A model generated the notes under the pieces. The model was not told where the DNA came from. It did no database searches and worked only from the letters and a program-made list of their open reading frames with translations. A DNA stretch of 64,000 bases, from the IMG/VR virus record IMGVR_UViG_3300023179_000009, positions 310,001 to 374,000 of that record; one strand, written 5' to 3'. Of the stretch, positions 3,900-49,098 are shown piece after piece. Position 1 is the stretch's first letter. Every line of letters starts with the position of its first letter. The position numbers and the translations under genes are program-made.

Positions 3900-3944
3900 C
3901 AGCCAACAAAGTTTAAAGTAAAAAATACCAACTAAGCGTAAACA

Positions 3945-4184
3945 ATGAAACCCACTCACGGATGGCAGTATCGCATCTTTAAAAAAACCGGTCAGCACTT
4001 GGTCGATGAACCGGATACCATCTACGAGTTGCGTCAAGTTTTTGTTGATGAAAATGATGATGTTGTTCATATTGGAGAAAGTGTGTTGAGTGCCGATTCA
4101 ATCGAACAATTGAGCAACCATATTGATAAAATGCAAAAGTGTTTGCGTGAAAGTGTTTTAGATTACCACACTGGCGAAGAGTAA
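3945..4184 (+). CDS. Small phage hypothetical protein (W.YR...VLDY family; paralogue at 53314)
   Basis: ORF directly after motif copy 3924. Confidence 0.7.
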   Translation: MKPTHGWQYRIFKKTGQHLVDEPDTIYELRQVFVDENDDVVHIGESVLSADSIEQLSNHIDKMQKCLRESVLDYHTGEE

Positions 4185-4282
4185 AAAGGAATTTATTTTG
4201 ATCTTTGTTTTTGTGCCATTGTTTGTTTTTTGTTGTTTTGTTACTGGAACTTTAATCGGTCGTTTTATCGTAAATTATTAAC

Positions 4283-6883
4283 ATGAGCGTTTTGAAAATC
4301 TTTCGTGATTTAGACAGTAAAACACAAGATGCCCAAAAGATTCAAGCCGACATTGAATCTTTTTTTGAAGAGTTCTATGGTGAATTAGATGCTGATTCAA
4401 CCAATAAAGAACTACGTTTTTGGTTAAGAAAAAGTGTGTGTTTGTTGAATCAAGTAAAGAAGTTTCTTAATGATTAAACTGTGGACCGTACCAAAGTAAA
4501 AAAGTAACCCACACGGCTAATAGAACGTATATCCAAAAGTTAGGTGGACTTTTGAGCATAACATATTATATGATTATGCTAACATTTTTTTAACATAATT
4601 TTAATATTTCTCTAACAAATAGAATTTTGTATGAAAAACAATAAAAAGCAAGTTGATAATAAGAAAAAAGTCAATAACAAGAAAAAGATTGATTGTGCCG
4701 CAGAACAACAAAAGCAATATGAGAGCATGATTCTCCGACGAGGCACACAAGCCAAGTGGGGAGAAGCAGAGTTGTATTTGACTGCCGATGAGATGGAGCG
4801 TTATTACGGAGAACGATGCGAAGAATTTGAGCCGTACTGTGGATCGTGTCAGGCTTGGTTAGAATGGAACAAAACAGGTAAGGCTCGTTTGCTTTTTGAG
4901 CGTGATGTTTTCATGAAACTTTTGGAAGAAAATCGTCTTTAGGATTATTAACAAATGAGTTGTGACGTTACCGAGAATTGTTGCGTGTGCGGTAAAAAAG
5001 TATATTGTTGCGACAAAGAACAATCGGTTAATAACAATTATGTTTGTGATGTTCACCGTGATGGATGTGAAGTGAAGGATGGTGTTTGGGTGTGCAGTGA
5101 GCAGTGTGAAGAAAAGTATAACACAAAGCATTTGAACATTTTTGGATGTGAAGTGAAGGATGGTGTTTGGGTGTGCAAAGAAAAACGTGATACTCAAAAC
5201 TCGTCTATGAACATTTTATCAATTTGGGACAAGTGTTGTGCTTGTGAAAATGTTAGCGATGAAGAACTCGATTATGCTATCGGTTTTCTCCGAGATTTAG
5301 AAGAAAAATTAGACAAGTTGGGACCAACATTTCTTTTATCTAGGAAAGAAGTTTGTAGAATGTTGGATGTGTTTGAGGCGTTCGGGTTTGCTCGAAAAGG
5401 AATGAAGGATTTGTAATACCAACTAAAGTGGCACGATGGCAAAATCATTCAAACAACTAGCAGAAAAACACGCCACCCAAAAATCTAAGATCGTTGCGAA
5501 ACAACGAACCAAACAGTTATTAAGGAAGATTAGATTCAATGATTGTGTTATGCAAAAGCATTATGAATCATTGATCAAAAACGGTTATCATTGGCGAACT
5601 GCTGAAAGTAAAACCTTAAAAACATTCAAAGAATATGACAATTAATAAAGTTGCTGCTTTAAAAGCAGGAGACAATATTCTGGTGGGTGATCAAGTTTAC
5701 ACGGTGACTGGAACTCACCAGACTGGCATTCATGATTTAGATGTTTATGTGAAAAGTGAATTGGATAGGTACGAAAAGAAATTAGCATTGTTTGCTGGTG
5801 ATCGAGTCTGTGTTTTAGGTCGTTAATCTAAGAAAACGCTACAATGGCTGGATTGTTGTTGTTCGTGTTGTTGGGCTATATGGCTAGTGTACGCATTTAC
5901 GATTGGTGGAACGGATATGCGGATTTGTTTTAGTCATTAACAAAAAAATTATGAAAACTGAAACCTTAGAACTAACTCGATCAGAAATTCAGTACCTTAT
6001 GGAAATTGTCAAGGATCATATTGATAGTGGAGTTTATTGGGGCAACCAAGAGAGGTTTCATCAAATGCAAAACAATGTGTTTGATAAACTAGAAGAAAGT
6101 ATGAGTTTAATTGATCCTGAAATGAACGGATTCGATGGAAATTATTAACGGAGTTTTCGAGCGTGAAATATGGAAATTGTCTTGTAGGGGCGTTGTATCT
6201 TCTCTGGAAGAAAAGAAAAACTGAACCAAAGTTTATTTACAGATACAGAACGAATACAAAAGTTCCTCATTTTATGGTGCGAACAAAACGTAGACTTTAT
6301 CATTATAAGGTAGAACAGGATCTTTTTCCTTGGCCTTTTTGTTACGTTTTATTCAAGGGAACTTTTGAATCTTTGCCTGTGCGAGAAGAAGAAAACTTTG
6401 TTAAAGGATACAATTAATCCGAATCAAAATGTCGGTCGGTGCGTAGTAAAGTTACGGGTGTTGTGACGCCAACTAACTTCTAGGATAACACGAATGTTCA
6501 AGGATTATCAAGACTACCTGAATTTTCACAATAATGATTTGTTACCGTTCAGTGAAAAGCACAATATTGTTATTAGGAAAAAAACCCTTGAGCAGTTTTT
6601 GATAGAAAATTACAAGGATAGTGTTGAACATTATTTGATGACGCAATACAAGACTGATGCGTTTCATGATTTGTTTTTCGGCAAGGGTGATATGGATTCG
6701 GATGAGTTGACGAGGGAAGAAATTCTTTATGAACAAATGTATAACGTCGTTTGTAATCTTATTGAGGTTTGTAGAATTAGTGGCTTTGATATTAATAGAA
6801 CTTCTAGGTTGGTTTTTGATATATTGACTATCCAAGGGGTGCTAGTCAATAGTGAAGACGCTTCGGTTAATAATAAGATGTAG
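4283..6883 (+). other. Short hypothetical CDS (4283-4477, 4631-4942, 4955-5416, 5436-5645, 5635-5826, ~5951-6148, 6163-6417, 6494-6883)
   Basis: Co-oriented ORFs; 4955-5416 is Cys-rich and has an internal duplication. Confidence 0.65.
5062..5177 (+). repeat. 35-bp exact direct repeat inside CDS 4955-5416
   Basis: TGGATGTGAAGTGAAGGATGGTGTTTGGGTGTGCA at 5062-5096 and 5143-5177 (GCEVKDGVWVC twice). Confidence 0.9.
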
Positions 6884-7763
6884 ATTTGTGGGTTAGTTGC
6901 CCAAAGTGATATTTGATATGATTGTTGTGGTGGGTTATTGGCCCAAAATGTAGAGAAAAGTGTTTCTATGTATTTTAGAATAGAAATTTCCTAATGGAAG
7001 ATAAAAGTTGAGTTTTATTTGAGTTTTTGAAAAATTAAGTCTGGTCTGCCCAACTCTTGAGTCACTCTTTATTCACAAAAAATTTGCTTATAATTGCCTT
7101 TTATTTGCGTGTTTTTTGATGTTTATAGACGATTATAAGATGCTTATAATTCGATGTAACCAGGAAAAAGCAACGAAACCAACAGTCAAAAAGCAATTTG
7201 TATGCAATTAAAATCAAATCAAAAGTGACTAAAAGTGACTATATTGAATTGCCACTACCACCATGAGTGAATAGTGATCTTGAGTCGTTGAGTGAAATCA
7301 GCGACTCTTGCATTTTTGATACCAACTAGCCACCATGTTCAGTCCTTAGATTCTTATTCAAAACAAGGAATTTTCTATGTACGTTGTAGTTGCTTCTACG
7401 AACCTCACGCACTTCAATGTTTACGGACCATTTGTGAATGAAGAAATTGCCGAGAAATGGGGTGATGAAAATATCGGCAAAAATGACTTAGAGTGGTTTG
7501 TTGAAAAAGTGCAAAAGGAAATTGTTGTTGATGATCCAAACCTGCCAGAGCATCACTTGACATAGTTTTTTGATACCAACTAGCCACCCAACAAATGGAT
7601 ACGATATGTCTGCAATAGAATGGCTTAAGGAAAATGACATCGAACCAGACTCGGTAAGCGATACGCTTATTGCCCTGTTAGATGCTTGTGATGACCAAAA
7701 AGTGGCTAATATGATGCGAACCACACTGATCGCATTAGAGATTTTTGATACCAACTAGACCCC

Positions 7764-7791
7764 TTGACAACCAGTTTTTCAAGCGTACAAT
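7764..7791 (+). promoter_or_regulatory. Sigma70-type promoter
   Basis: TTGACA-N16-TACAAT just after motif 7747 and upstream of ORF 7843 (RBS AGGA). Confidence 0.55.
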
Positions 7792-7842
7792 TAGTTACTA
7801 GTAGTAACTAATTCGCCCCCACCCTCCCTTTTAGGAAACATT

Positions 7843-8328
7843 ATGTTCCGCTCTGATGATGAACGTGCTTGCGCTTATGCGACTATGAAGGTGCTGGAGC
7901 GTATGCTGGCAAAAGATGGAGTTATTCCGCCAGGATACCAGCGTGATTTTAGTGGATCTTCAGTGTGTGTTACTCTGCCACCAGACAGCATTGTAAAGCG
8001 TGAACTTGGTGAAAATGGGGATGGAACCGTACTGAAGACTGCTGTGCAGAATCTTTACGGTTATGCACTGTGGGCTTTTTTGATCCAAAAGTTGCGAAAG
8101 TTTAATCAGTGGAAACTGATTCGATCTGCTATTATCGAAAGTATGCAAGAGGTGATTGTTCGTGGCGGCAGCAATATGCGTGACGAAATCACAAAGGAAT
8201 ATCCTGAAGTTGCTAAGGAAATCGAAGATTTGCAGCGTGATCTGCAAATTCCTGATCGAATCGAAGAAACTCCTAGGAACTTTAAGAGTCCCAAGTTGCC
8301 TGCTACGGTGACGATAAAGATCAAGTAA
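7843..8328 (+). CDS. Hypothetical protein
   Basis: 161-aa ORF with RBS and upstream promoter. Confidence 0.75.
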   Translation: MFRSDDERACAYATMKVLERMLAKDGVIPPGYQRDFSGSSVCVTLPPDSIVKRELGENGDGTVLKTAVQNLYGYALWAFLIQKLRKFNQWKLIRSAIIESMQEVIVRGGSNMRDEITKEYPEVAKEIEDLQRDLQIPDRIEETPRNFKSPKLPATVTIKIK

Positions 8329-8401
8329 GGTATACTACCTAGGATCGTGTTGCTCTTTGACAATTTGCTGCGGTGATGAAATTGGAAAACATAGCGGACT
8401 T

Positions 8402-9144
8402 GTGCATTTAATGTATTGAAAAATGTTTCTGCCATACTATAATAAAGTATGGAAAAAACATTAAAATGCGTTAAATGCAGTCAAGATCGTGATGTTGGCA
8501 GAAAAATGTGTCGGCCATGCTATCTTGAATACAAGCGTTCTTTGGAAAAACAACGCTATCAAGATAATGGAAGAAATAATTACCAAAAGACCTGTGCTGC
8601 TTGTCAAACAAGTTTTGAGGCATGGCGTAAGAAACAAATTTTTTGTTCTAACTGCCATAAATTAAAACTCAAGTTTGCAGCAGAAAGCAAAAGTACCAAT
8701 CAATATGTAAATATTGGTGGTAAAAATGAACACAGATCTATTGCTGAAAATGTTTTAGGATATAAATTGTCTTATAACATGGTTATTCACCATGTAGACG
8801 ATAATCCTAAAAACAATAAAATTAGCAATTTAATGGTAATGGATCGAAGGACACATGGAAGGCTACATCAATATCTTGATTGCCAACGAGTCATCATAGA
8901 GAAATCTATGAATGAGAACTGTGGAAATTGCTGGAAAGCCCTGATAGTTCCCATGACTACAGCATGGTTGGAAACGACGGGTGCGAAAGTTATAAAACTA
9001 TGGGAAATTGGGTAATCAGCAGCCGAGCCTCTTTAAAATGAGGAAGGTTCAGAGACTTATGCTCACAGCACCTTAACGAGTAAAGTCGAAGGTGAAGATA
9101 TAGTCCAAATGAGTAATCATGATGTGAAAGCATCAATCTCATTG
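8402..9144 (+). ncRNA. Group I intron carrying an HNH endonuclease gene
   Basis: P AAATTGCTGGAAA (8925), Q AATCAGCAG (9014), R GGTTCAGAGACT (9046), S AAGATATAGTCC (9095); exon ends in U and intron ends in G. Confidence 0.9.
8449..9015 (+). CDS. Intron-encoded HNH homing endonuclease
   Basis: EHRSIAE...VIHHVDDNPKNNKISNLMVM...H; N-terminal CxxC pairs; ORF runs into the intron core. Confidence 0.85.
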   Translation: MEKTLKCVKCSQDRDVGRKMCRPCYLEYKRSLEKQRYQDNGRNNYQKTCAACQTSFEAWRKKQIFCSNCHKLKLKFAAESKSTNQYVNIGGKNEHRSIAENVLGYKLSYNMVIHHVDDNPKNNKISNLMVMDRRTHGRLHQYLDCQRVIIEKSMNENCGNCWKALIVPMTTAWLETTGAKVIKLWEIG

Positions 9145-9256
9145 AAAATCCGCTGGTCGCAAGACCTTGAGGGTTCGAGTCCCTCCCGCAGTATTAGACA
9201 TTTGCAGTATAATTCAATAACACTTATCATTATGGGAACTATTCGTTGTTCCCATA

Positions 9257-9691
9257 ATGATAAAATACTATACTGCAAGAAAATATAAGAAAAATATAGA
9301 TTGCTTACGTCAAACAGCACTAGATCATCGTGTGTATCGTAACGGATGGTCTGTGCGGAGCATACTACAAACTTATCCTCATTTAATATCAAGAATAAGT
9401 TTGGCATTTGATGGATCACAGGCAATAGGTCTGGCGATCCTAATAGACCATAAGAAATTAAATCAATATAAAATCCACTCTTTGAGTCGTCGTGAATATA
9501 ATTTCTATTTAAGCATCTGGCTAGACCCGTTAAAGAACGAACGGCGGTTAATGGTTTATGTGAAACCAGGATACCGGAAACGTGGAATCGGAACCGACTT
9601 GATTCGCAATTTACAATTGACCGGCCGAGTAACTTTCAAACAAGGCATACGGGGAACACGCACTTTCTATAGAAAAGCACTAAGTTCATGA
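9257..9691 (+). CDS. GNAT-family acetyltransferase-like protein
   Basis: Motif A: VYVKPGYRKRGIGTDLI. Confidence 0.6.
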   Translation: MIKYYTARKYKKNIDCLRQTALDHRVYRNGWSVRSILQTYPHLISRISLAFDGSQAIGLAILIDHKKLNQYKIHSLSRREYNFYLSIWLDPLKNERRLMVYVKPGYRKRGIGTDLIRNLQLTGRVTFKQGIRGTRTFYRKALSS

Positions 9692-9701
9692 ATTTCTAAA
9701 C

Positions 9702-9729
9702 TTGACAACGATTTGCGGATTGGTATAAT
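9702..9729 (+). promoter_or_regulatory. Sigma70-type promoter with extended -10, overlapped by a 26-bp palindrome
   Basis: TTGACA-N16-TATAAT with TG; ATAATGTAACTTATAAGTTACATTAT at 9725-9750. Confidence 0.65.
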
Positions 9730-9759
9730 GTAACTTATAAGTTACATTATACCAACTAG

Positions 9760-9815
9760 GCGGATATGCCGAAGCAAGTTTATGATTTGTGGGTTCGATT
9801 CCCACCCCGAGGACT
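9760..9815 (+). pseudogene. tRNA remnant
   Basis: tRNA-like 5' start GGCGGATATGCCG and T arm GTGGG-TTCGATT-CCCAC, but no anticodon arm. Confidence 0.4.
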
Positions 9816-9842
9816 TTTGATTAGATACTATATTAAATATAT

Positions 9843-9917
9843 GCCTAGGTAGCCCAACTGGCAGGAGGCGGATCACTCAAAATGATCACAGTGCGAGTTC
9901 GAATCTCGCCCTAGGTA
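9843..9917 (+). tRNA. trnL: tRNA-Leu(CAA), short variable loop
   Basis: GCCTAGG/CCTAGGT, GATCA-CTCAAAA-TGATC, GCGAG-TTCGAAT-CTCGC. Confidence 0.9.
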
Positions 9918-9988
9918 CTTGAAAAAAAGGCTTTTTAATGTCGAACCTTTATTTGTAAAAAATTGTGTTTGCCACACTACTATAGAGT

Positions 9989-10774
9989 ATGGCAAGACAA
10001 CGAAAATGGACAGATGATCAACTAATAGAGGCGGTTAAAACATCTCAAAGTTATTCGCAAGTTATTCAAAAACTTGGCTTGAAACTTTCTGGGGGAACTC
10101 ACGCCAATATCAAGTTAAATATTAGAAAATTAGGACTCGATACAGAACATATTACAGGTCAAGGTTGGTGTACTGGCGATTTTCATGTTCATTTAATTAA
10201 AAATTTTGTTAAGATACCTACTGAAAAAATATTGGTTAAGGACTCCGAATACACATCCACCCACAGACTAAAACATAGACTGTTTAAAGAAGGTTTGTTA
10301 GAACAGAAGTGCAGTAGTTGCGGATTAGGAACCAAATGGAATGGTAAATTTATTTCACTTCAATTAGATCACAAGGATGGTGATCGTTGTAACAATCAAA
10401 TTGACAACCTAAGAATTTTGTGTCCTAACTGCCACAGTCAGACCGAATCGTTTTGCGGCAAAAACATAAAGAAAAATAAAATAAATTGCCACAGTCAGAC
10501 TGACTCGTTTTGCGGTAAAAAGAAAAAGAAGAATAAAATAAAAGTCCGCAAAACAATTTGTGTTAACAAATGTGTTTTTTGTAATTTAGATTACGAAGCC
10601 AAAGATAAAAAACAAAAGTATTGTTCTTACGAGTGCCATAAAAAAAGTCTAAGGAAAATAGATCGTCCTTCAAAAGAACAATTGATAAATGAACTAGCGG
10701 AGAGTAATTATGTTCAAGTTGGAAAAAAATATGGCGTATCAGATAATGCGATAAGAAAATGGCTTAAACTCTAA
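9989..10774 (+). CDS. Free-standing HNH endonuclease between tRNA genes
   Basis: CSSCG...LQLDHKDGDRCNNQIDNLRILCPNCHSQT; C-terminal HTH-like segment (YVQVGKKYGVSDNAIRKW). Confidence 0.88.
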   Translation: MARQRKWTDDQLIEAVKTSQSYSQVIQKLGLKLSGGTHANIKLNIRKLGLDTEHITGQGWCTGDFHVHLIKNFVKIPTEKILVKDSEYTSTHRLKHRLFKEGLLEQKCSSCGLGTKWNGKFISLQLDHKDGDRCNNQIDNLRILCPNCHSQTESFCGKNIKKNKINCHSQTDSFCGKKKKKNKIKVRKTICVNKCVFCNLDYEAKDKKQKYCSYECHKKSLRKIDRPSKEQLINELAESNYVQVGKKYGVSDNAIRKWLKL

Positions 10775-10783
10775 GTTATTTCT

Positions 10784-10856
10784 GGGGCGTTCATCTAATG
10801 GTCTAAGATGTCACTCTTATAAGGTGGTCAAGAAAGTTCGATTCTTTCACGCCCTA
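10784..10856 (+). tRNA. trnI: tRNA-Ile(UAU)
   Basis: GGGGCGT/ACGCCCT, D stem ATCT/AGAT, loop CTTATAA, T arm GAAAG-TTCGATT-CTTTC. Confidence 0.8.
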
Positions 10857-11015
10857 TTTTCTACAATTTGACTCAGAAAAAAGTTCAACTCTCGTTATCT
10901 CTATTTTTTGTCATTTGACTTAAGTGTTTGATATTAAACAACTTACGTCAAATGGGAAAAACTTTCTAGTCGTAAGTCTTTGTCTGATAATACTTTAGGT
11001 TAAAGGAGCAATAAA

Positions 11016-11510
11016 ATGCCTAAGTTTGAAGTTACTATTGAGCGAGAAGTTCCTTGTTATCGTGAACGTGCTACTGTGGTAGTAGAGGCTGATTGTGCAG
11101 AAGATATTGAAGACAATTTTGATTTTGCTTTATTGGATGATATTGAATTAGATTGGGAAGAAGTTATGGAAGGTCATGGTGGTTTTCCGTGTGACTATGA
11201 CATTTGGAGCGTAGACTCTGTTGACGAATCTATGCCTACTGATATTGACTTGAAAACGTCTTAGGAACTTATCATGCGTTTGCTCATGGGCTTTGTTCAA
11301 GAGCCAAAACTTGAGATGCGTTTAAGTATAATCTGTCAGGTTTGCAAACTGAGTGTTGCGACTCGTTCCAATTTTGATGTCGTGATTCTCGGAACACGCA
11401 CCAAGTACAATGTTTGCAAATGTGGCAGAGAAATAGAATCGCCTGATACCAACTACAAGCGTAGGTGGCGATACTGGAATAAAAAAGTTAATTTCCATAA
11501 AGAGAATTAA
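11016..11510 (+). other. Two small hypothetical CDS (11016-11264 acidic; 11274-11510 Zn-ribbon-like CxxC...CxC)
   Basis: RBS GGAG upstream of 11016. Confidence 0.65.
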
Positions 11511-11511
11511 T

Positions 11512-12195
11512 ATGCCTTCACAAATTACTAAAACTGTTTATTCATTTTCTGAGTTACTCAAAACCGGAAAAGAATCTGCTATCGAACGTGCTAGATGCCG
11601 CCTGAAGGAAATTGCGCTCAGTGATGATTGGTATGAATATGAGATTTCGGTATGGAAGAGTGCATTAGAGCAAGTTGGTTTTGTCCGTCCTGAGATTAAC
11701 TTTAGTGGTTTTGGCTCTCAGGGTGATGGTGCAAGTTTTACTAGCTCGTGTGATACTGAACGATTGTTTTGGTACAGTACCCACAAGATTGTTGGCAAGA
11801 ACTGCATTAAGCCTACAAAGCGTACCGGACTAGATGAGGATTTTCTTCCGTGGCTGGTAAGTCAGATTGGCGGGCAGTATGGTTATTGTTCGGGCATCAA
11901 GCGGTTAGGATCGAAGATTATTGAAGGGCTGTCTTTTTCTGTTGATCGAATTGATAACCACTACTCGCACGAGAATACGTGTCGATTGGTTGTTAAGGAT
12001 ACGACATTGAGTGATACCGACTATGTTCGGGTACAGAACTGGGTTTCGGATCTGGAAAATCTGCGTCTCAGGATTTGTCGGGCAATTTATTCGGGACTAG
12101 AGATTGAGCATGATTATCATGTGTCCGACGACAACCTGACTTCTTTGGATGAAATTAACGGTTATCACTGGGACATTAACGGGAGGATGGAATGA
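11512..12195 (+). CDS. Conserved phage/ICE protein (family often labelled 'antitoxin of toxin-antitoxin stability system')
   Basis: VYSFSEL...AIERAR...DDWYE...INFSGFGSQGDGASF motif. Confidence 0.45.
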   Translation: MPSQITKTVYSFSELLKTGKESAIERARCRLKEIALSDDWYEYEISVWKSALEQVGFVRPEINFSGFGSQGDGASFTSSCDTERLFWYSTHKIVGKNCIKPTKRTGLDEDFLPWLVSQIGGQYGYCSGIKRLGSKIIEGLSFSVDRIDNHYSHENTCRLVVKDTTLSDTDYVRVQNWVSDLENLRLRICRAIYSGLEIEHDYHVSDDNLTSLDEINGYHWDINGRME

Positions 12196-41001: not shown

Positions 41002-41603
41002 ATGAAAGGGTTTATCGTGGCAACCAAAGTCAAAGTCACAAATCGAATCAAGCGGCAGATCCAGGCCGAGGCTCTCCGGGCATTGCACGACCGGGGACAC
41101 TTCACCGCCGCCGAGCGGCACGCCGGAATCGAGGCTGACCGCTGCATGTGTGGCGGTTTCGTGTGGGGCACGAATCTGCTCTGCAACGAGTGTGTGATGG
41201 AACTCGCCCGCAAGCAAAAGTAATACCAACTAGGGGAGTGTAGGAATCACCTACACTCCCCTAGTCTTTCAAAGAAAGGTTGACCATGCGAAAGATCGAA
41301 AAGAAAATGATCGAGGCGATTCAGAATCGCAAGGACATGAGCCTCAACAACACCGTGGTCAAGCACGGTACAGCCACCAGCGTTGTGTTTCTCCACAATC
41401 ATCCCATTTGCATTTTCATGTGGGCTGATAATGCGGTGGCTGTCAGCAATTGTGGCTGGTCAACGAACACCACCAAAAGCCGCCTGAATGCGGTTTTGGG
41501 TTCGTTTTGTGATACGGGGATTCACCAGCACAAGCATGTCTGGTACATGGGCAAGGAAGAGTTCCGCAACGGAACTCGTGTCCCGATGAAGCAGATCGCC
41601 TGA
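41002..41603 (+). other. Array cargo CDS (41002-41223; 41280-41603)
   Basis: Motif-hairpin-RBS architecture. Confidence 0.75.
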
Positions 41604-41667
41604 TACCAACTAGGGGAGTGTAGGAATCACCTACACTCCCCTAGTTCTTTTTCCAGAAAGGGAAAAC

Positions 41668-42129
41668 ATGAAACTCATCCTGATGCGTGGCGTGAGCGGC
41701 AGCGGCAAAAGCACGCTGGCCGAAAAGATTTGCAGCGAACAGGAATTTGCTGTAATTGTTTCAACCGATCACTATTTCATGGTCGATGGTGAATACCGAT
41801 TCGACCCGAAGCGTCTCGGTGAGTATCACTCCGCTAACGTGAACCGAACCGAACAGTTCATGGTTGAACGGTGTGCGTGTATCATCGTGGACAACACGAA
41901 CACACAAGCGTGGGAAATGAAACCCTACGTCGAGTTGGCCATGAAGCACGGCTACGCTATCGAAATCCATCAGCCCGATCCGGTCAGTTTCGAGGAACTG
42001 ATGCAGCGGCAGGCAAACCGGGCCGACAGCAACAAGGCTCTGCCCGCCGAAGTGGTAAAGCGGATGCTCGACCGATTCGAGCACGATGTGACAGTGGCAA
42101 AGATTCTCCAATCGAAGCGACCCTTCTGA
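41668..42129 (+). CDS. P-loop kinase, AAA_33 / polynucleotide-kinase (N4BP2-like) family
   Basis: LILMRGVSGSGKSTLA, VSTDHYF, IIVDNTN...EMKPY. Confidence 0.82.
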   Translation: MKLILMRGVSGSGKSTLAEKICSEQEFAVIVSTDHYFMVDGEYRFDPKRLGEYHSANVNRTEQFMVERCACIIVDNTNTQAWEMKPYVELAMKHGYAIEIHQPDPVSFEELMQRQANRADSNKALPAEVVKRMLDRFEHDVTVAKILQSKRPF

Positions 42130-42186
42130 TACCAACTAGAAGGAGTGTGATAAGCACTCCCCCTAGTTCTTTTTCCAGAAAGGAAC

Positions 42187-43286
42187 ATGATGGATCACGA
42201 ACAGGCCATGCGGAATGCCATGAAGCGTGTGATGACGTTCATGGATAGCCTCTCGCCGGGGAACAGTCCCCGTGCCACAACAACTGACAGCCCGATGATT
42301 CACTTCAATGGCTGGAATCGGTGGTGTGTCAAGTTCGACACACACAGCGGTAAAAACTATCACGCATTTGGTTCTACGCTCGTCGAAGCGTTCAATCGGT
42401 TGGTCGATGAACCAACCGTGTCTGATACCAACTAGACCAGTGTTCCCTTCCCCTCTTCAAAGGAGTCTGCCATGCAGATCAATTTCCTCGGTGAGAACTA
42501 CAACGTCGAGCCGGTTGCCATGCGATACACAGACGGCAATCTGGCAATTCAAGTTCTGCGTGCCGATGGGCCTTTCGGTATGCTCTCGACCAATGTCGAG
42601 GGTGTGCAACTCGCCCCGAACGAGTTCTGCGTGAAAACGTGGAGCGAGAACGATCCGTGGGCATTGGATCTTATCCGCCAGTGTCCGCAGTTCGAGAACA
42701 CTGGACGCACGTTCCGTAGCGGGTTCGTCAGCGGCCCGATCTACCGGATGGTTGGTTGATACCAACTAGATCGATACCGAACTACGGCCCTCGTCGTTCA
42801 AGACAGAAAGGACGCTGTAGTGTCATGCCAAAGCGGTGGCCACCGCACGGCAATCGTTGCCAAAGTACACGGCAACGATCAGCACACTACGGAAATGCGG
42901 GTGCGATACCCGCCGGGGTCAGCATACACTGTAGGCCAAAAGCCGAACAACGAGGCGTCTATCCCACGCCTACAACCCCGAAAGGGGAGAGAGTGTATGG
43001 GGTCTAATACCAACTAGGGGGACATGGGGAGACAACCCATGTCCCCCTAGTTCTTTTATGAAAGGCAAACATGGTTCCACGAGAAATGTATCGGTGGGAA
43101 TATTTCCATGCGATGGGCAACAACTGCCGATTGCATGGAATGTCATCTCACGATGCCCAAACCGTGATCGATAAGGCCGCTGGTTTCGGCAACGATTTCG
43201 AAAACTTCTGGACAGGATTTCTGTACGGCAGAAGTGATCAAATCGCTTCTTTGCCAAGCAAAGATTCCGTGGTCTGGGTTTTTTAG
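42187..43286 (+). other. Array cargo CDS (42187-42435; 42472-42759 DUF4313-like; 43071-43286)
   Basis: 42472 has LAIQ...PFGMLSTN...FCVKTWSEN. Confidence 0.65.
42770..43005 (+). ncRNA. Candidate structured non-coding RNA cassette
   Basis: No RBS-supported ORF; many nested stems (see findings). Confidence 0.5.
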
Positions 43287-43385
43287 TCTGTCACATTTCG
43301 ACAGGCCGTGCGTAATACCAACTAGAACGGTATCGAGAATGGCTCTCGACGCCCACAACCCTCCTGTCCAGAAAGGACAACTGTC

Positions 43386-43700
43386 ATGAAGTTCATCCTC
43401 AATGCGTTTTCTCTAAACATGATCGGCACATTTCCGGCGACCATCACGGTCGAGGAAGTCTCGACCCACGAAGCCTGTGTCGAGGCTCACGGTGTCACCA
43501 GTGGCGTCGGCCACCCCGATACGGCGGCGGTGTTCGCTTCGATTCTCGGTACGCCCGTTCCGATGAATCGTGCAACCGTCAGTCTCGTGTCTGGTGATCG
43601 TGTGCTGGTGGGCCAATACAGTGGCCCTCGTCTGCCCGAGGGTGCAACTACGCTGCCCGAGGGTGCCACGATCAAGTGGCTCGTCGTCTCTGTCAACTGA
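43386..43700 (+). CDS. acrIII-1: DUF1874 / AcrIII-1 cyclic-oligoadenylate ring nuclease homologue (anti-CRISPR type III)
   Basis: ILNAFSLNMI...SGVGHPDTA...PMNR...LVGQYSGPRLPEG: GH, NR and RLPEG signature of the STIV B116/SIRV1 gp29 family. Confidence 0.8.
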   Translation: MKFILNAFSLNMIGTFPATITVEEVSTHEACVEAHGVTSGVGHPDTAAVFASILGTPVPMNRATVSLVSGDRVLVGQYSGPRLPEGATTLPEGATIKWLVVSVN

Positions 43701-43771
43701 TACCAACTAGCAGGGTGTGGTGATGAGCCACACCCTGCTAGTCCTTCAACCCCCAACCCTGAAAGGCAATC

Positions 43772-44149
43772 ATGCCCTACACCGCTTGCGTCCTCGAAGA
43801 GTCATCCCGCACCACGCTCGTGGAGTGGATGTATTCCAATCACGAAGTGCCCGAGCACTTCGAAATCGTCGGCCACCACTGCACCGTCGATCTGAAGCCC
43901 ATCGCCAAAAGCATGGGCTGCGATCTGGATGGCCAGCGACACGAAATGCGTGTCGTTCGTTTCGGTCGTCTCGACGGCATCATGGCTGTCGAAGTCGAGA
44001 CGGTTGTTCCCAGCAAGAACGACCGCAAGCACATCACCTTGTGCTACGACAAGCCGAATGGCTGGAAACCGAAGCAGTCGAACGACATCGTGGAATGGAC
44101 TGACATCGAACCGTTCGTTCTGCACGGTGTCGTGAAGGAATGTGCGTGA
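43772..44149 (+). CDS. 2H phosphoesterase (RNA-repair type)
   Basis: Two HxT-like motifs: HHCTV and HITL. Confidence 0.7.
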   Translation: MPYTACVLEESSRTTLVEWMYSNHEVPEHFEIVGHHCTVDLKPIAKSMGCDLDGQRHEMRVVRFGRLDGIMAVEVETVVPSKNDRKHITLCYDKPNGWKPKQSNDIVEWTDIEPFVLHGVVKECA

Positions 44150-44212
44150 TACCAACTAGGGGGATGTGATGAAAGTCACATCCCACCTTTCCTTTTCACA
44201 AAAAGGCCGATC

Positions 44213-45325
44213 ATGAACACTGATTTTCAAATGATGGTCGAGGCGCAGGTGGGTGACAAAACGGTCACCGTTTATTGCGAAACCCATGCAGAAGCGTGGG
44301 CTGCGGAAAATGCCATCCGCAACATGGCACGACAGTTCGGCTTGCAAGTGGGCACGGTGACAATCACCGTCAACGACACACCACGGTGGCGAGTCGATAC
44401 AATCTGGCTCAATCCTCCATACAGTGTTGTGCAGGATCAGTGATACCAACTAGGGGGGTGTGAACAACACCCCCCTCTTCTCTTGAAAGGAGAACGACGA
44501 TGGAAAACGAAGGCCAGATGCGAAGTAGGACATGCACGTTCGTCAACAGAACGTACATGTTCGAACACATCGAAGAGGCACTGATGTTTGCTCCTCCGGA
44601 GCAGACGATCAGCATCGAGATTCTGCCAGATGGACGCTACAGTGTTACCGAAACGTGGCGGGATGCGGAGCCTGCCGACCGCAGACGGTTCGCCAGCATC
44701 TGCAATCGTGGCGGTAACTGATACCAACTAGGGGGACACGGGGAACAACCGTGTCCCCCTAGTTCCGTTTTCCCTCAAACCAGAGAGGCCATCATGACGA
44801 TCAAAGTTCAGATTCCGGGCCGAGTCACAGCCTCTGCCCTTGTCGAGTCCGGACTCGACGCTTCTAGCAACGGAGTGCTGACATTCCACGCTTTCAGCGA
44901 CGCCATGAAAGCGAGGGTGTTGGAACTGATTGCCGCAGGGCAACACGTGGTGGTCAAGGCCACCACCGAAGTGCCCCGAACCGGCGATTGGTTCGAGCCA
45001 GCACAGTGATACCAACTAGGTGGACACGAGGACACAACTCGTGTCCCCCTAGTTTCGTTTCTCCTAACCCCGGAGTTTTTCCATGAACGATACAATCAAA
45101 TGGCGAAACTTGCCCGCCCGCATGACCCCGAAGGTCGATCCCTCGTTCGATGAACTGTGTCGTGCGATGAAGAATCGTACACAGATCACGGTCATCGGAG
45201 CATGGGGCCATCCCATCACTGGCCTCGTCAACAAAATCGAGGCAGAGGGTGGTAGCGGTCGATGCTGGAACGTGACGATCAGTCACGGCATCCACACCAG
45301 CACGATCTTCGTCCGCACGGCGTGA
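44213..45325 (+). other. Array cargo CDS (44213-44443, 44500-44721, 44794-45009, 45083-45325)
   Basis: Each ends exactly on the TGA of a motif copy. Confidence 0.78.
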
Positions 45326-45393
45326 TACCAACTAGGGGGACACAGGACACAAGCCTGTGTCCCCCTAGGTTCGTTTCCACCCCGGAGGATCAC

Positions 45394-45945
45394 ATGATCC
45401 ACATCGCTAGTTTCGTTCGGCGTCAAACCGCCGACAGTCGGTTCAGCCACTGGACGCTGGACGACAATGCTCTCGTCCAAAGGATCGAAGCCGGTCTGCC
45501 CAATGCCAAACCCGGATACCGGGATGGCGTGGTGCTCGTGCCGGTCGATCCCGATGGCTTCTTCAGTGCCACGGTCACGCTGACCAACGGCCAAAAGCTG
45601 GTGGGCGAGTTCGCCAGCCGTCGCACCGGCGAAGAGCCTCGTAAGAGTCTCGCCGCCATCGGCCAGAAGCAGCCCGCCGGTACGGTGTGGGTCGTGCTCT
45701 ACGCCCACCACGTTCTCGCTGAGAAAAACGAGAACGAGACCGATGCCGACTGGGAAGTGGTCAGCGTCAACGCCAGCCCGAGCGTGGACGCTGAACCGGC
45801 TCCCATGCCGCCGGAAACGCTGATCGCCAACCACTTCGAGTTGGATGGCGGGACGGCGACGAAGATGAGCGACAGTGACTTCGTCGCATCGCTCAAGGCC
45901 AGCGTCCTCTACTGGAAGGACAAGGCACAGGTTCAGCCTGAGTGA
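45394..45945 (+). CDS. DUF3228-like protein
   Basis: FVRRQT, KPGYRDGVVLVPV, RRTGEEP, VVLYAHHVLAE, DWEVVSVNA, PM.PET, GGT. Confidence 0.7.
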   Translation: MIHIASFVRRQTADSRFSHWTLDDNALVQRIEAGLPNAKPGYRDGVVLVPVDPDGFFSATVTLTNGQKLVGEFASRRTGEEPRKSLAAIGQKQPAGTVWVVLYAHHVLAEKNENETDADWEVVSVNASPSVDAEPAPMPPETLIANHFELDGGTATKMSDSDFVASLKASVLYWKDKAQVQPE

Positions 45946-45979
45946 TACCAACTAGAACAGTGTCGAGGGGGATGGCAAC

Positions 45980-47405
45980 GTGCTGTCCCCCTCGACGGTT
46001 CGATTCCTTCAGGAGAACAAAATGGAGTTGCACATCTACCAGCTCGGGGGTCTCGACAACGACTCCCTGATCGGCATCGCTCACGACACGCACACGATGC
46101 GGTCGCTGATCGAACTGGCCGAACGCCGGGGTGCCACGGGCGTGAGCCTGCACGGCACCGTCCCGCACTTGCGGGAGAGCGTGAGCGGTGAGTTCACGCT
46201 GGACGAGGCCAAGCGGGAATACAACAGGGCCGTCGATGCGGTCAACGCCGTCATCATGGACGGCATCGACCCGGCGTTCGGGATGCAGCCCTGATACCAA
46301 CTAGGGGACTACAGGAACGGCCTGTAGTCCCCTAGTTGCGTTCCTGCCCCGGAGACTTCGCCATGATTTCTGAAGGGCCGAACGATCTTTTCATTGAAGA
46401 CGGCGAAAGCCTGTCCTCGATCATCGAACGGATCGGCAAGAAGTGGCCCGGTGCCACACTCGATCATTGCAAGATCGAGCACAACGACTGGTTCGAAAAA
46501 ATGATCGTGAAGTTGGTATCGCCTCAGTGATACCAACTAGGGGGACACGAGGACACAACTCGTGTCCCCCTAGGCTCGTTTTCCTCAACAACAGGAGCCT
46601 TCCCCATGAAGGTGCAAAAGAAAGTTTTCCGTTTCCACGCCAAGCGTGGGCAGCAGGATATGGTGATCGAACTGCTGCGGCAGTATGGTCAACCGTGGAC
46701 GACCACGAGCGCCGAGGGCATTCGTGTGTTCGTCGAGTTGCCCGAGGGCGTCAGCAAGCGGAGCGTCGATAAGATGCTGCGTGATGCTGGTGTGCCGGGT
46801 GCGGCATCATGCCGTAACGTCCCCATCGTGGACGTTGGATATGATGCCGGAAGGATGGAGCCTGCCCTTGAACGGCTCTATCGAGCCGGATACTTGAACC
46901 GAAAGGTCAAGATCTCGTGGGGCGGCACACGGGTCACCATCGGCTATCTTCGGGCAGAAGATTACTGCGACGGGCCGGGATTCGGCTTGTACGTAGACCC
47001 CGACAAAAAGATGAACGGCTACCAACTGCCGACATCGGCAGTTCAAGGAACACCGGGACAGAAACTGCCGTGGTGTTGATACCAACTAGGGGGACACAGG
47101 ACACAAGCCTGTGTCCCCCTAGGTTCGTTTCCCCTCCAACAAGAAAGATTCTTCACATGAAGAACTTCCTCAAGCTGCTCCTCTGCTCTGTTCTGGTCGG
47201 ATCGTGCTTCGCCGCCATCATCTGCGGCTACGTGATGGTCGGAACGGCCATGGGGTATTTCCACCCCAACTACGTTCCCGAAGCGGGTGAAACGCTTCTC
47301 GGTTTCTACGTCACGCTGTACACATGCAGCGTGGCCCCATTCCCGTTGCTGGTGCTGCTCATCAGTACCAGTACGGCCGTTGCGAGTGTGTTCGAGCATC
47401 GGTGA
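45980..47405 (+). other. Array cargo CDS (45980-46294, ~46363-46530, 46606-47079, 47157-47405 membrane protein)
   Basis: Each ends on a motif TGA. Confidence 0.75.
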
Positions 47406-47415
47406 TACCAACTAG

Positions 47416-47601
47416 AACACCACACGAGTGAACACCGTCTACGGCTGGTCATCCTCACCCCCTGCTTGCAGGCGTAGAGGGTGCCAAACCGGAAGCGTGG
47501 GCCGACATGCGGGTTCGATCCCCGTAGTCGTTTCCTGTCTGGTGCGGATCATAGGGGCTGATCGTAAATGCTCCGCCAGCCGTAGACGGCTTCACCTTGT
47601 T
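47416..47601 (+). ncRNA. Candidate structured RNA with a tRNA-like T arm
   Basis: 14-bp terminal stem 47435-47448/47576-47589; GCGGG-TTCGATC-CCCGT at 47509-47525. Confidence 0.5.
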
Positions 47602-47681
47602 AATACCAACTAGGTTGGTGTCGAGTGAGTCACAACGTGTGACACACTGACGTTCGGTAGGTTTCTTTCAGGAGGATCGCC

Positions 47682-48056
47682 ATGAGCAAGCCCAAGGTCA
47701 AGTCCGAGCCCGTCGCCCGCACCGCCAAGCCCAAGTCGGCCAAGCAGTTGGCCAAGCGGGCGGCGAACATCGCTGCCTGGGAAGCCCGCAACGCCGCCCT
47801 TCGGAACGGCACCTTCAAGGGCGTGGTCGAAAAGGCCGCTGAGGCGAAGGCCCGACACGTGGCCGAGCGGATGGCCGAGACGGAGAAGGCCCGCACGATG
47901 GTGGTGACCCACATGAGCCACCCGGTCTACGGCCAACGGCTCAGCCGTTTCCTCAACGGCAGCAAGGCCGACCCGAGGTTGCTGGCCAACGTGGTGATCC
48001 CCAACTGGATCAAGACGCAGGGTATCGTCGTCGATCACGTGCGACCCACCACGTGA
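47682..48056 (+). CDS. Basic Ala/Lys-rich hypothetical protein
   Basis: AGGAGG RBS, MSKPKVK start, high-GC codons. Confidence 0.75.
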   Translation: MSKPKVKSEPVARTAKPKSAKQLAKRAANIAAWEARNAALRNGTFKGVVEKAAEAKARHVAERMAETEKARTMVVTHMSHPVYGQRLSRFLNGSKADPRLLANVVIPNWIKTQGIVVDHVRPTT

Positions 48057-48306
48057 TCTGATACCAACTAGGGGGGTGTGAGTGATGCAAGTCGCTCACA
48101 CCCCCCAGCGGGTTGACGGCCCGCCATCCTGTCCCCGTCTCGACCCCTGAGTCATCCACACTCATACGCTTCGAGTGACTCAAGTCGGGGGATGGGATAA
48201 CTGGCCGTCGCCAGTCTTCCACCTAGTGATACCAACTAGGGTGGTGTCGAGTGAGTCACAACGTGTGACACACCGACGTTCGGTAGGTTTCTTTGGGAGT
48301 CATGCC

Positions 48307-48675
48307 ATGAGCAAGACGAAGAGCAAGGTCAAGCAGCCGGAGGCCGTGGTCGAGCAGCCGGTCGCCCCGGTCGAGACGAAGAGCATCGCTTGGCCGGTCG
48401 AGGCCGAGAAGGAACTGCTCTCCTCCGGTGGCTACATCAGCGGCGGTCGTTTCTATCTGCCGATGAATCGTGCGGCGGGTACGTGCGAGTACACGAGCAA
48501 GGCTGGTCGCACGGCGACCTACTGCATCTTCCGGGCCGACACGAACGGCTACAACTTGCTGCCCATCAGCAAGAGTGGCAAGGTCGCTCACAGCGACATC
48601 AAGCAGAACGGCAAGTACCTCAACGTGGGCTTCCGTGTCAGCAGCGAACGTGTCAGCAAGGTCGTGATGCGGTAG
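48307..48675 (+). CDS. Hypothetical protein; shares leader and N-terminal style with 47682
   Basis: GGGAG RBS, MSKTKSKVK start. Confidence 0.75.
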   Translation: MSKTKSKVKQPEAVVEQPVAPVETKSIAWPVEAEKELLSSGGYISGGRFYLPMNRAAGTCEYTSKAGRTATYCIFRADTNGYNLLPISKSGKVAHSDIKQNGKYLNVGFRVSSERVSKVVMR

Positions 48676-48735
48676 TGATACCAACTAGGGGGGAGCGTGG
48701 TGAAGAGCCACGCTCCCCCCGACTGTCGAACGGAG

Positions 48736-48770
48736 TGCCGCAGGGTCGAGCGATGACCCTGCGGCACTTT
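48736..48770 (+). terminator. Intrinsic terminator near the array end
   Basis: AGTGCCGCAGGGTC-N7-GACCCTGCGGCACT-TTT. Confidence 0.6.
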
Positions 48771-49098
48771 TCGAAACTCAGAAACTCTGAGTGATACCAA
48801 CTAGAGGGGTGGGTACCCTATGCCACTGCTGGCGGATACCGCACCACCCTATTGTTTATAACCCTTTAATTTTTTATTTTTATCTAATAGGGTTTTGTTT
48901 TTCAAGAACTCTGCGGCAAAAATTTCCGCCGCCGAATTTTTCTCACCCTCTATTAGGCTCAAAAAATTATTAAAAGCCGTTTTCTGTAAAAATCGCCGTT
49001 AAAAATTTTTGCAAGTACTACTATGATTATAATGAAGACTTAAAAGTATTTTATTTCGCTTTAAAATTTGTAAAATAATTAAAAATATAAGGACAATT

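What the first reader, a model, noticed from the sequence alone, without database searches (positions are those of the whole stretch)
3924..48804. 45-kb phage gene-cassette array punctuated by ~85 same-strand copies of T(G/A)ATACCAACTAG
Seen: a 13-nt asymmetric motif recurs about 85 times, always on the + strand. From ~14 kb onward there is usually exactly one small gene, tRNA or structured non-coding unit per interval. The motif sits flush with the upstream stop codon and about 15-70 nt before the next RBS/ATG. It does not occur in the flanking 49-64 kb module. Known precedents: PeSL promoter/stem-loop cassettes that shuffle ORFs in RB49-type T4 phages, integron attC arrays, 13-bp unidirectional stoperators in mycobacteriophage L5, and RNase III sites between T7 early genes. 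This sequence matches none of them. Inference: this is a modular accessory-gene (anti-defence) acquisition/expression platform. The motif could be (a) a recombination site, (b) a single-box phage promoter, (c) a repressor/terminator site or (d) an RNA processing site. No recombinase is visible in this window.
Basis: partly seen in the sequence, partly recalled or inferred. Interest (0 to 1): 0.95.

Follow-up and report, generated by a model that had tools for sequence, protein, structure and literature searches.

The report
One-per-gene promoter/terminator cassettes, huge phage
A 459-kb freshwater phage marks over 100 mostly small same-strand genes with an identical 13-base signal that most likely acts as a phage-specific promoter, and related phages have shuffled single genes exactly at this signal.

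Summary
TRATACCAACTAG occurs 60 times exactly and 88 times with at most 2 mismatches, all on the + strand, against about 2 expected by chance. The region is larger than reported: 21 more copies lie up to 26 kb upstream of the window, next to helicase, UvdE and ligase genes.

Anatomy points to a promoter. Nothing is conserved upstream of the 13-mer. A variable 5-nt gap follows, then a pyrimidine-purine pair at positions 19/20. Ribosome-binding sites start at position 20 or later, almost never before. This 13-mer + 6 nt + purine layout matches the published early promoters of AR9/phiKZ virion RNA polymerases, but the sequence differs.

In the GC-rich distal part the motif is fused to a G/C hairpin plus T-tract. 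The inferred start site lies inside the hairpin's 5' arm, so only read-through RNA could form the terminator.

At least four related metagenomic lineages keep the 13-mer while gene content is mosaic. Homology blocks start and end at the motif, including a clean one-cassette indel. This is PeSL-like modular shuffling.

No RNA polymerase, sigma or adjacent integrase gene was found in about 110 kb examined. A GC3 gradient (0.45 to 0.9) remains unexplained. Verdict: a new variant of known kinds.

The parts
1082..48804 (+). Window part of the motif array: 88 same-strand copies of TRATACCAACTAG (60 exact). The array continues about 26 kb upstream of the window.
15438..15470 (+). Typical short-leader module. 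Motif 15438-15450, 6-nt spacer, inferred RNA 5' end at 15457 (motif position 20), which is the first base of AGGAGG. ATG at 15468.
14320..14341 (+). Leaderless-type module. The ATG of ORF 14339-14635 sits exactly at motif position 20. Similar cases with ATG at position 23: 3923, 5414, 18810.
32532..32580 (+). Typical hairpin module. Motif 32532-32544; stem-loop 32539-32571 whose 5' arm starts in the motif (AACTAG...CTAGTT); then a T-rich tract.
36388..48804 (+). Dense distal zone: about 35 copies (36 with up to 2 mismatches in 36-49 kb, 35 of them exact, 27 with strong hairpins). Median spacing 334 bp. Gene GC3 rises to 0.7-0.9.
20092..20144 (+). A conventional terminator-like hairpin plus T-run sits immediately upstream of a motif copy (20132). 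The same arrangement occurs at 7282-7329 and 26751-26803.
24341..24442 (+). Motif copy between two tRNA genes, preceding tRNA-Lys (24369-24442). A second case is 33740, preceding tRNA-Glu (33774-33846).
47601..47690 (+). Motif plus an 80-nt 5' UTR plus the first three codons, nearly identical to 48227-48315. The two coding sequences are otherwise unrelated.
48059..48226 (+). Non-coding unit with its own motif copy, conserved in relatives (L019, L033). Similar ORF-less units: 47403-47600 and 48676-48791.
48792..49010 (+). Last motif copy and the abrupt boundary from about 60% GC to about 33% GC. The boundary is conserved (about 77% nt identity) in relative L019.
45323..46304 (+). Two adjacent units (genes 45394-45945 and 45980-46294) that appear in the opposite order in relative L033. 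Homology blocks start at motif +0 and end at the next motif +12.
33419..33446 (+). Perfect sigma-70-type promoter match (TTGACA-16-TATAAT) inside a unit. Others: 9702-9729 (12/12) and 7764-7791 (11/12). These are a separate, sparse promoter class.

Best explanation
The 13-mer is the core of a phage-specific promoter. It would occupy about -19 to -7 and direct initiation at a purine 7 nt past its 3' end (motif position 20).

It drives, nearly gene by gene, a roughly 75-kb same-strand block of early or middle genes. These include small ORFans, tRNAs, small RNAs and some DNA/RNA-metabolism genes. The host genome is a 459-kb freshwater phage.

The layout is a 13-nt invariant block, a free spacer and a Y/R start. 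There is no -35 element. This is the layout of promoters read by a multisubunit RNA polymerase with a phage-encoded specificity factor, as for the injected virion RNAP of AR9/phiKZ-type jumbo phages. Which enzyme reads it here is inferred, not shown.

In the GC-rich distal part the promoter is fused to a G/C hairpin plus T-tract. The hairpin's 5' arm contains the start site. RNA arriving from the upstream unit can form the full hairpin and terminate. RNA started at the module lacks that arm and runs on.

The same 13-45-bp module is repeated more than 100 times in direct orientation. It therefore also serves as a recombination substrate. Relatives differ by insertion, deletion, replacement and transposition of single promoter-gene cassettes, as described for PeSLs of T4-type phages.
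For: Shown by sequence:
- Copy number and strand bias are far above chance.
- Information content is confined to positions 1-13 with a sharp upstream edge, plus Y19 (73/82) and R20 (77/82) in hairpin-free sites. There is no -35-like conservation.
- Shine-Dalgarno cores start at position 20 or later: none at 15-19, 16 at 20-23, and 3 of about 130 sites with a detectable SD start earlier.
- ATG lies exactly at position 20 or 23 in several SD-less units.
- Terminator-like hairpins or T-runs lie directly upstream of some copies.
- Copies precede individual tRNAs and ORF-less units.
- In an orthologous promoter pair from genomes with 62% aa identity in the adjacent gene, the flanks are 95% identical while the spacer (positions 13-19) is completely diverged.
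- The 13-mer is identical in at least four further lineages with 38-56% GC and unrelated or diverged genes.
- Hairpins: 34 of 81 sites. The 5' arm spans motif positions about 8-24. Mean dG is -31.3 kcal/mol for RNA from position 6 and -11.1 for RNA from position 20. In the 36-48.8 kb zone, 61% of motif windows reach -25 or lower, against 8% of control windows.
- Shuffling: a one-cassette 672-bp indel bracketed by motif+hairpin repeats. Homology blocks begin at motif +0/+2 and end at the next motif +12. Units are swapped or transposed.
- The cassette proteins are not paralogues.

From papers:
- The AR9 early promoter is AAATATATATTAT-(6N)-G+1, and phiKZ/phiR1-37 start 6 nt downstream of their element (PMC5312081).
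- PeSLs are a promoter plus a G...C stem-loop terminator, with ORFan shuffling (PMC2839356; PMC4122927).
Against: - There are no RNA data. The 5' end at position 20 is inferred from sequence statistics and could equally be a processing end.
- No RNA polymerase, sigma or gp55-like gene was seen in the roughly 110 kb of this genome that could be examined (contig 272-383 kb).
- The motif is not AT-rich, unlike published vRNAP promoters.
- One unit (18810) has an SD-like AGGAG inside the motif, upstream of the inferred start.
- Only about half of the hairpins are followed by a clear T-run.
- The recombination mechanism (general homologous versus dedicated) cannot be told from sequence.
Confidence: 0.6

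Rival explanations
1. RNA processing signal. Long transcripts from a few sigma-70-type promoters are cut by a phage or host endoribonuclease 6-7 nt downstream of the 13-mer. This yields monocistronic mRNAs that begin at the SD.
For: A fixed 5' end at position 20 is equally predicted. A few perfect sigma-70-type promoters exist in the array. T7 early mRNAs are processed between genes (established knowledge).
Against: - In hairpin units, motif positions 8-13 are base-paired in RNA; in other units they are single-stranded. One RNA-recognising enzyme is therefore less likely than dsDNA recognition.
- Terminator-like hairpins directly upstream of some copies would keep the site from being transcribed.
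- The Y-1/R+1 pair after a free spacer is the usual signature of start-site choice.
- To my knowledge, no endoribonuclease with a 13-nt single-strand recognition site is known.
Confidence: 0.12
2. Promoter for a T7-like single-subunit RNA polymerase, starting at the G of position 13/14. The G-rich hairpins would then be 5' stabilisers of the mRNA, as in T7 phi10.
For: Positions 14-18 are G-rich in hairpin units. There is a superficial likeness to TAATACGACTCACTATAGGGAGA followed by a 5' stem-loop (from memory, not tested). The information content (about 24 bits) is high.
Against: - In 82 hairpin-free sites, positions 14-18 are unconstrained, and conservation reappears at 19/20.
- In an orthologous pair the spacer is fully diverged.
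- T7-type promoters are conserved without a gap through +1 (established knowledge).
- SD onset is at position 20, not 14.
- No such polymerase gene was seen in the part examined.
Confidence: 0.1
3. Dedicated site-specific recombination site (integron/attC-like or serine-recombinase target) of a cassette acquisition system. The promoter-like features would be secondary.
For: Breakpoints between relatives lie at the motif. AACTAG...CTAGTT inverted repeats flanking a variable palindrome recall attC architecture. A serine recombinase is itself a cassette in one relative. The gradient in GC3 and motif perfection could be an age gradient.
Against: - No integrase or recombinase lies in or next to the array in about 110 kb.
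- More than half of the copies have no palindrome.
- The fixed relation to SD, ATG and tRNA starts, and the copies in front of conserved core genes in syntenic positions in a distant relative, are not expected for att sites.
- Repeats of 13-45 bp are enough for phage homologous recombination (PMC2839356).
Confidence: 0.08
4. Binding site for a DNA-binding regulator that blocks or modulates transcription (stoperator-like roadblock, or an anti-termination loading site).
For: Copy number is high.
Against: - It does not predict the Y19/R20 pair, the sharp SD onset at position 20 or leaderless ATGs at 20/23.
- It leaves each unit that follows a terminator-like hairpin without a promoter.
- No sign of a temperate lifestyle (integrase or repressor) was found in the part examined.
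Confidence: 0.07

Closest known systems
PeSL (promoter-early stem-loop) cassettes of T4-type phages RB49/phi1, PST, nt-1 (PMC2839356, PMC4122927)
   Same: A composite promoter plus G...C stem-loop terminator sits between small ORFan genes in a plastic region. The stem-loop can overlap the promoter or start region. Relatives differ by insertion, deletion or replacement of single ORFs with crossovers inside the element. There is no dedicated recombinase.
   Different: The promoter here is a single 13-bp box with no -35/-10 sigma-70 consensus and no AT-rich UP region. The scale is larger: about 109 copies over 75 kb, one per gene. The genome is a 459-kb non-T4-like phage. The motif also serves core genes. 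A strong GC3 gradient is present. Mini-circles were not tested.
Early promoters of the virion RNA polymerase of phiKZ-related jumbo phages (AR9: AAATATATATTAT-(6N)-G+1; PMC5312081)
   Same: The geometry is identical: a highly conserved 13-nt element, 6 nt, then a conserved purine start. There are many copies in front of early genes. Deviations from consensus are few.
   Different: The sequence is unrelated and not AT-rich. There are 2-3 times more copies. The presence of split beta/beta' RNAP genes in this genome is unknown. There are no transcript data.
Single-box promoters read by phage sigma-like factors (T4 late promoter TATAAATA with gp55; phiEco32/7-11 type)
   Same: One -10-region element without a -35 element, with the start a few nt downstream (established knowledge; PMC8948821 listed).
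   Different: The box is longer (13 nt). The gene class is small early-type genes, not virion genes. No gp55 or sigma gene was found in the part examined.
Integron attC cassette arrays
   Same: One-directional array of single-gene cassettes separated by a repeated element with a variable palindrome flanked by short inverted cores. Cassette-level gain and loss occurs.
   Different: There is no intI, attI or Pc. More than half of the elements have no palindrome. The element has a fixed relation to the downstream SD/ATG. Each cassette appears to carry its own promoter.
Mycobacteriophage L5 stoperators
   Same: 13-bp asymmetric sites, in one orientation, intergenic or overlapping stop codons.
   Different: Here a start-site-like Y/R pair and SD onset lie at a fixed distance. 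Copies follow terminator-like hairpins. No repressor or temperate functions were seen.

Membership tests
PeSL cassettes (T4-type phages) | Strong sigma-70-like early promoter (-35, -10, AT-rich upstream region) | tested here: not met
   No conservation upstream of the 13-mer. The 3' hexamer AACTAG shares 2 of 6 bases with TATAAT. Sigma-70-type matches in the array are at chance frequency.
PeSL cassettes (T4-type phages) | Stem-loop (often polyG...polyC) adjacent to or overlapping the promoter, acting as a terminator | tested here: inconclusive
   34 of 81 window sites have a G/C hairpin of about -31 kcal/mol overlapping motif positions 8-24, often with a T-rich tail. Terminator activity was not testable. 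More than half of the sites lack a hairpin.
PeSL cassettes (T4-type phages) | Location among ORFans in a hyperplastic region; indels or replacements between relatives with crossovers in the element | tested here: met
   Most cassettes have no family match. Relatives are mosaic, and homology blocks are bounded by the motif.
PeSL cassettes (T4-type phages) | Formation of excised mini-circles | not testable with these tools
   Needs raw reads or inverse PCR.
phiKZ/AR9-type virion-RNAP early promoters | Extended, highly conserved element of about 13 nt with a conserved purine start 6 nt downstream | tested here: inconclusive
   The sequence signature is met: 13-mer, free spacer, Y19/R20, SD onset at position 20. 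The start site itself is not measured.
phiKZ/AR9-type virion-RNAP early promoters | AT-rich consensus | tested here: not met
   TRATACCAACTAG has 5 G/C in 13 positions (G variant; 4 in the A variant) and no AT run.
phiKZ/AR9-type virion-RNAP early promoters | Genome encodes split beta/beta'-like RNAP subunits (virion and non-virion sets) | not tested
   None was seen in contig 272-383 kb.
Integron (attC array) | Adjacent tyrosine integrase intI with attI and Pc | tested here: not met
   No integrase or recombinase domain in the window ORFs scanned or in the flanking loci.
Integron (attC array) | Every cassette ends in an imperfect palindrome with inverse core/core sites | tested here: not met
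   Only 34 of 81 sites have a palindrome. None occur in 0-14 kb, and none were seen in the C-lineage promoter listing.
T7-type single-subunit RNAP promoter | Uninterrupted conservation from about -17 through +1 | tested here: not met
   Positions 14-18 are unconstrained in 82 hairpin-free sites. The spacer is fully diverged in an orthologous pair.
L5-type stoperator | 13-bp asymmetric operator in one orientation within transcription units, bound by the phage repressor | tested here: inconclusive
   Size, asymmetry and orientation are met. No repressor or integrase was identified. Binding is not testable.

The most novel reading that the evidence does not exclude
The array is a polarised gene-capture platform. 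New promoter-gene cassettes, drawn from a high-GC phage or mobile-element pool that shares the same 13-mer, would enter preferentially at the distal end by recombination targeted to the motif/hairpin module. The gradient in GC3, motif perfection and hairpin presence would then be an age (amelioration and decay) gradient. This would be an integron-like system without an integrase, in which the promoter doubles as the attachment site.
Probability: 0.12. Interest if true: 0.85.

Novelty: new variant of a known kind. Interest (0 to 1): 0.6.

Why it matters
The motif gives a sequence-readable map of about 109 transcription units in an uncultured 459-kb phage, and a precise, testable prediction: an RNA 5' end 7 nt after the 13-mer.

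If the overlap design holds, with the start site inside the 5' arm of the upstream unit's terminator, it is a very compact way to insulate one-gene units.

The comparison of relatives extends PeSL-type modular shuffling from T4-type phages to a huge-phage clade with a non-sigma-70 promoter, and at a much larger scale. This may help explain how huge phages build and turn over large sets of small accessory genes, some of which look like counter-defence functions.

A 13-bp, apparently very specific promoter is also a candidate orthogonal expression signal once its polymerase or specificity factor is identified.

Tried and rejected
- Close relatives in GenBank phages: none for 36-49 kb or 49-64 kb (megablast). 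tblastn of the 464-aa flank protein found nothing.
- Literature search for the motif string found only unrelated primer hits.
- Tandem duplication as the origin of the array was rejected. Of 127 + strand ORFs only one real pair is similar.
- T4 late promoter TATAAATA is not enriched.
- PDB sequence searches of the 699-, 492- and 464-aa neighbours for RNAP likeness found only a weak GHKL/HSP90-N match or nothing.
- Hunting the RNAP gene. A 460-kb contig from a sample with a neighbouring accession number looked promising. Its close relatives include many giant-virus (GVMAG) bins and did not include this contig.
- Walking the genome with 6 of the 9 exact-protein look-ups covered contig 272-383 kb and found no polymerase or sigma. 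One look-up had no record.
- Bacterial and archaeal genomes: the two-motif pattern gave 2 hits, about the number expected by chance, and neither is an array.
- A marine contig with ten copies is a 35-bp tandem repeat, judged unrelated.
- The same phage in other samples is 99.97-100% identical, so it gave no polymorphism.

Full report
WHAT THE WINDOW IS

The window is positions 310,001-374,000 of a 458,813-bp contig (IMGVR_UViG_3300023179_000009, also Ga0214923_10000003). The same phage is 99.97-100% identical in other lake assemblies, including a 428,612-bp ENA contig. Phage-type families are present: an HNH endonuclease, GP88, a metallophosphoesterase and PHROG hits. One protein has distant homologues in Rak2-like jumbo phages. 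There is no nucleotide-level relative in GenBank phages.

THE OBSERVATION

TRATACCAACTAG occurs 60 times exactly, all on the + strand, with 0 expected. With up to 2 mismatches there are 88 + strand copies between 1082 and 48804, plus two chance-level hits elsewhere, against 2.2 expected.

In 65 of 88 copies, the motif's own TGA/TAA (positions 1-3) or TAG (positions 11-13) closes a long open frame. The next start codon is usually 17-68 nt downstream.

- 21 more + strand copies lie upstream of the window, back to contig position about 283.9 kb.
- Nothing convincing lies further upstream, in 49-64 kb, or in the next 10 kb, judging by gene content.
- One 16-mer variant of the motif occurs in the whole contig only inside this region.

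The unit is therefore about 109 copies over about 75 kb. In the upstream part, copies precede the SNF2 helicase and a 699-aa GHKL-like protein. They lie among UvdE, DNA ligase, a PP-loop ATPase and PcfJ genes.

ANATOMY OF THE MOTIF

A position-by-position profile shows no conservation upstream of the 13-mer. Positions 3-12 are almost fully conserved. Positions 14-18 form a variable stretch. Conservation returns at positions 19 and 20.

I pooled 137 distinct sites from this phage and its relatives:
- In the 82 hairpin-free sites, position 19 is a pyrimidine in 73 and position 20 a purine in 77.
- The 55 hairpin sites show the same bias.

Ribosome-binding cores have a sharp onset:
- None starts at positions 15-19.
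- Sixteen start at 20-23, many as Y|AGGAGG or Y|GAAAGGAG.
- Three of about 130 sites with a detectable SD start earlier.

In several units without an SD, the ATG sits exactly at position 20 (14320) or 23 (3923, 5414, 18810).

In an orthologous promoter pair from this phage and a distant relative, the adjacent protein is 62% identical. The flanks are 95% identical, but positions 13-19 have diverged completely.

Some copies lie directly after terminator-like hairpins or T-runs (20092-20131, 7282-7316, 26751-26790). Others precede single tRNAs (24341, 33740) or ORF-less units.

Together these features indicate a DNA signal that fixes an RNA 5' end at position 20. That places the 13-mer at -19 to -7, followed by a free discriminator-like spacer and a Y-1/R+1 start.

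HAIRPINS

In 34 of 81 window sites the motif's AACTAG (positions 8-13) begins the 5' arm of a G/C hairpin that ends in CTAGTT, often followed by a T-rich tract.
- Mean folding energy is -31.3 kcal/mol if the RNA includes the motif. It is -11.1 if the RNA starts at position 20.
- In the 36-48.8 kb zone, 61% of motif windows reach -25 kcal/mol or lower, against 8% of control windows.

The inference follows. The hairpin is a terminator for RNA coming from the upstream unit. RNA started at the module lacks the 5' arm and escapes. This step is inferred, not shown.

HOW IT COMPARES WITH KNOWN PROMOTERS

The AR9 transcriptome paper gives the virion-RNAP early promoter as AAATATATATTAT-(6N)-G+1. It states that phiKZ and phiR1-37 also start 6 nt downstream of an extended conserved element (PMC5312081). 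The geometry here is the same. The sequence is not, and it is not AT-rich.
- A T7-type promoter is unlikely because of the unconstrained spacer.
- A sigma-70 promoter is unlikely because there is no -35 element and the -10-equivalent hexamer is AACTAG.
- A few perfect sigma-70-type sites exist separately (9702-9729, 33419-33446).

I could not find the polymerase or specificity factor. About 110 kb of the genome was examined through annotated loci without one, and pattern-based hunts failed.

RELATIVES AND SHUFFLING

A two-motif pattern scan of metagenomes and IMG/VR recovered other lineages that keep the identical 13-mer:
- A' (L013, L019)
- A2 (L033: 34 copies in 11.95 kb)
- B (L012, L014, L017, L018, L021: 56% GC, with cassettes encoding a serine recombinase and an ArdC-like protein)
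- C (L030: a 177-kb contig, 38% GC; its listed promoter regions show no G/C hairpins and it is syntenic with the upstream part of this phage)

The array proteins are not paralogues. Between lineages, homologous cassettes (30-93% aa identity) are interspersed with unrelated ones and are partly reordered.

Nucleotide homology blocks begin at motif +0/+2 and end at the next motif +12 or just after the hairpin. Units 45323 and 45943 are swapped in L033, and unit 41221 is transposed.

Two near-identical B strains differ by one 672-bp cassette, bracketed by a direct repeat of motif plus hairpin. Within the window, units 47601 and 48227 share only the motif, an 80-nt UTR and three codons.

This is the behaviour described for PeSLs: a promoter plus a G...C stem-loop terminator, ORFan shuffling by recombination between elements, and no dedicated recombinase (PMC2839356; PMC4122927). 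Bacterial genomes have no such arrays.

THE GRADIENT

Along the array, GC rises from 0.33-0.38 to 0.59, then drops to 0.33 at 48.8 kb.
- Gene GC3 rises from about 0.45 to 0.71 on average, up to 0.9 (rho 0.69, p 4e-11). GC1 stays above GC2. Flank genes have GC3 of 0.22-0.36.
- Exact-motif fraction, hairpin fraction and copy density rise in parallel.
- The same polarity is present in A' and A2, so it is old or maintained.
- One high-GC cassette (DUF3228) is 65% identical to a protein of a 58%-GC phage-like contig that lacks the motif.

Candidate explanations, none tested:
- influx from a high-GC gene pool with slow amelioration;
- GC-biased repair in the most recombining part;
- selection of the earliest genes for a GC-rich host's codon usage. 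The five phage tRNAs read UUG, AUA, AAY, AAA and GAA.

VERDICT

The best-supported reading is a phage-specific single-box promoter class, fused in part to overlapping terminators, which also acts as the substrate for PeSL-like cassette shuffling. The enzyme is unknown and there are no RNA data.

It is a new variant of known kinds rather than a new category. The integron-like 'acquisition platform' reading is not excluded but lacks a recombinase and does not explain the start-site anatomy.

Noticed in passing
window 8868-9123 (+): Group I intron (Rfam RF00028, 70 bits) overlapping the end of an HNH-type ORF (8449-9015), in the tRNA/HNH-rich part of the array.
   Followed up: no
window 9843-9918, 10783-10857, 24255-24442, 33774-33846; also 9760-9830 and 23850-23900: Five tRNA genes (Leu-CAA, Ile-TAT, Asn-GTT, Lys-TTT, Glu-TTC) read mostly A/U-ending codons. 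Two tRNA-like fragments lie directly after motif copies 9747 and 23831 and were not called by ARAGORN.
   Followed up: partly
window 12000-48800: Monotonic gradient of GC and GC3 along the array (GC3 about 0.45 to 0.9), with an abrupt return to 0.33 GC at 48.8 kb. It is conserved in relatives and has no tested explanation.
   Followed up: partly
window 38511-38990, 41668-42129, 43772-44149; L170 7471-9657: RNA-repair-type functions appear as separate small cassettes: HAD_SAK_2 phosphatase, AAA_33/polynucleotide-kinase-like, and a weak cyclic-phosphodiesterase hit. Upstream of the motif region lie an RNA ligase, a metallophosphoesterase, an exoribonuclease-like gene and a NYN domain gene.
   Followed up: no
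window 48059-48226 (also 47403-47600, 48676-48791); L019 108-371, 1213-1382, 1825-2000; L033 10869-11038: ORF-less units with their own motif copy, conserved across three lineages and predicted to fold into a multi-helix structure. Covariation is weak and there is no Rfam match. They are possible small RNAs.
   Followed up: partly
L170 2167-6106 (contig about 274-278 kb, upstream of the motif region): An AcrVA2-like protein, an HTH protein and a 541-aa TnpB/Cas12f-like (Cas12f1-like_TNB) gene sit just outside the motif region, followed by MscL.
   Followed up: no
L021 1176-2853 (- strand) and L025-L028: In the 56%-GC lineage B, motif-bounded cassettes encode a serine recombinase (Resolvase+Recombinase) and an ArdC-like antirestriction/zincin protein. 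They lie next to RuvB-like and AAA ATPases and an SNase. Whether B is a phage or another mobile element that shares the promoter is open.
   Followed up: partly
L024 1458-1785: A 1.8-kb marine metagenome contig carries ten copies of TAATACCA(A/G)CTAG as a 35-bp tandem repeat. It has no other similarity and was judged coincidental.
   Followed up: no
window 11512-12195: A 227-aa protein of unknown function has about 30% identical homologues in Rak2/121Q-like E. coli jumbo phages and in Acinetobacter and Caulobacter phages. In some E. coli phage records it lies inside the annotated direct terminal repeats.
   Followed up: no
L011 7897-12478 and L030 4244-8824: A conserved trio lies in the same order in this phage and in the 177-kb relative: a 699/704-aa protein with a weak HSP90/GHKL N-terminal match, a 439-aa PcfJ-domain protein and a 346/339-aa protein. 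Motif copies occupy the same positions, including the same deviant ...CTAT copy.
   Followed up: partly
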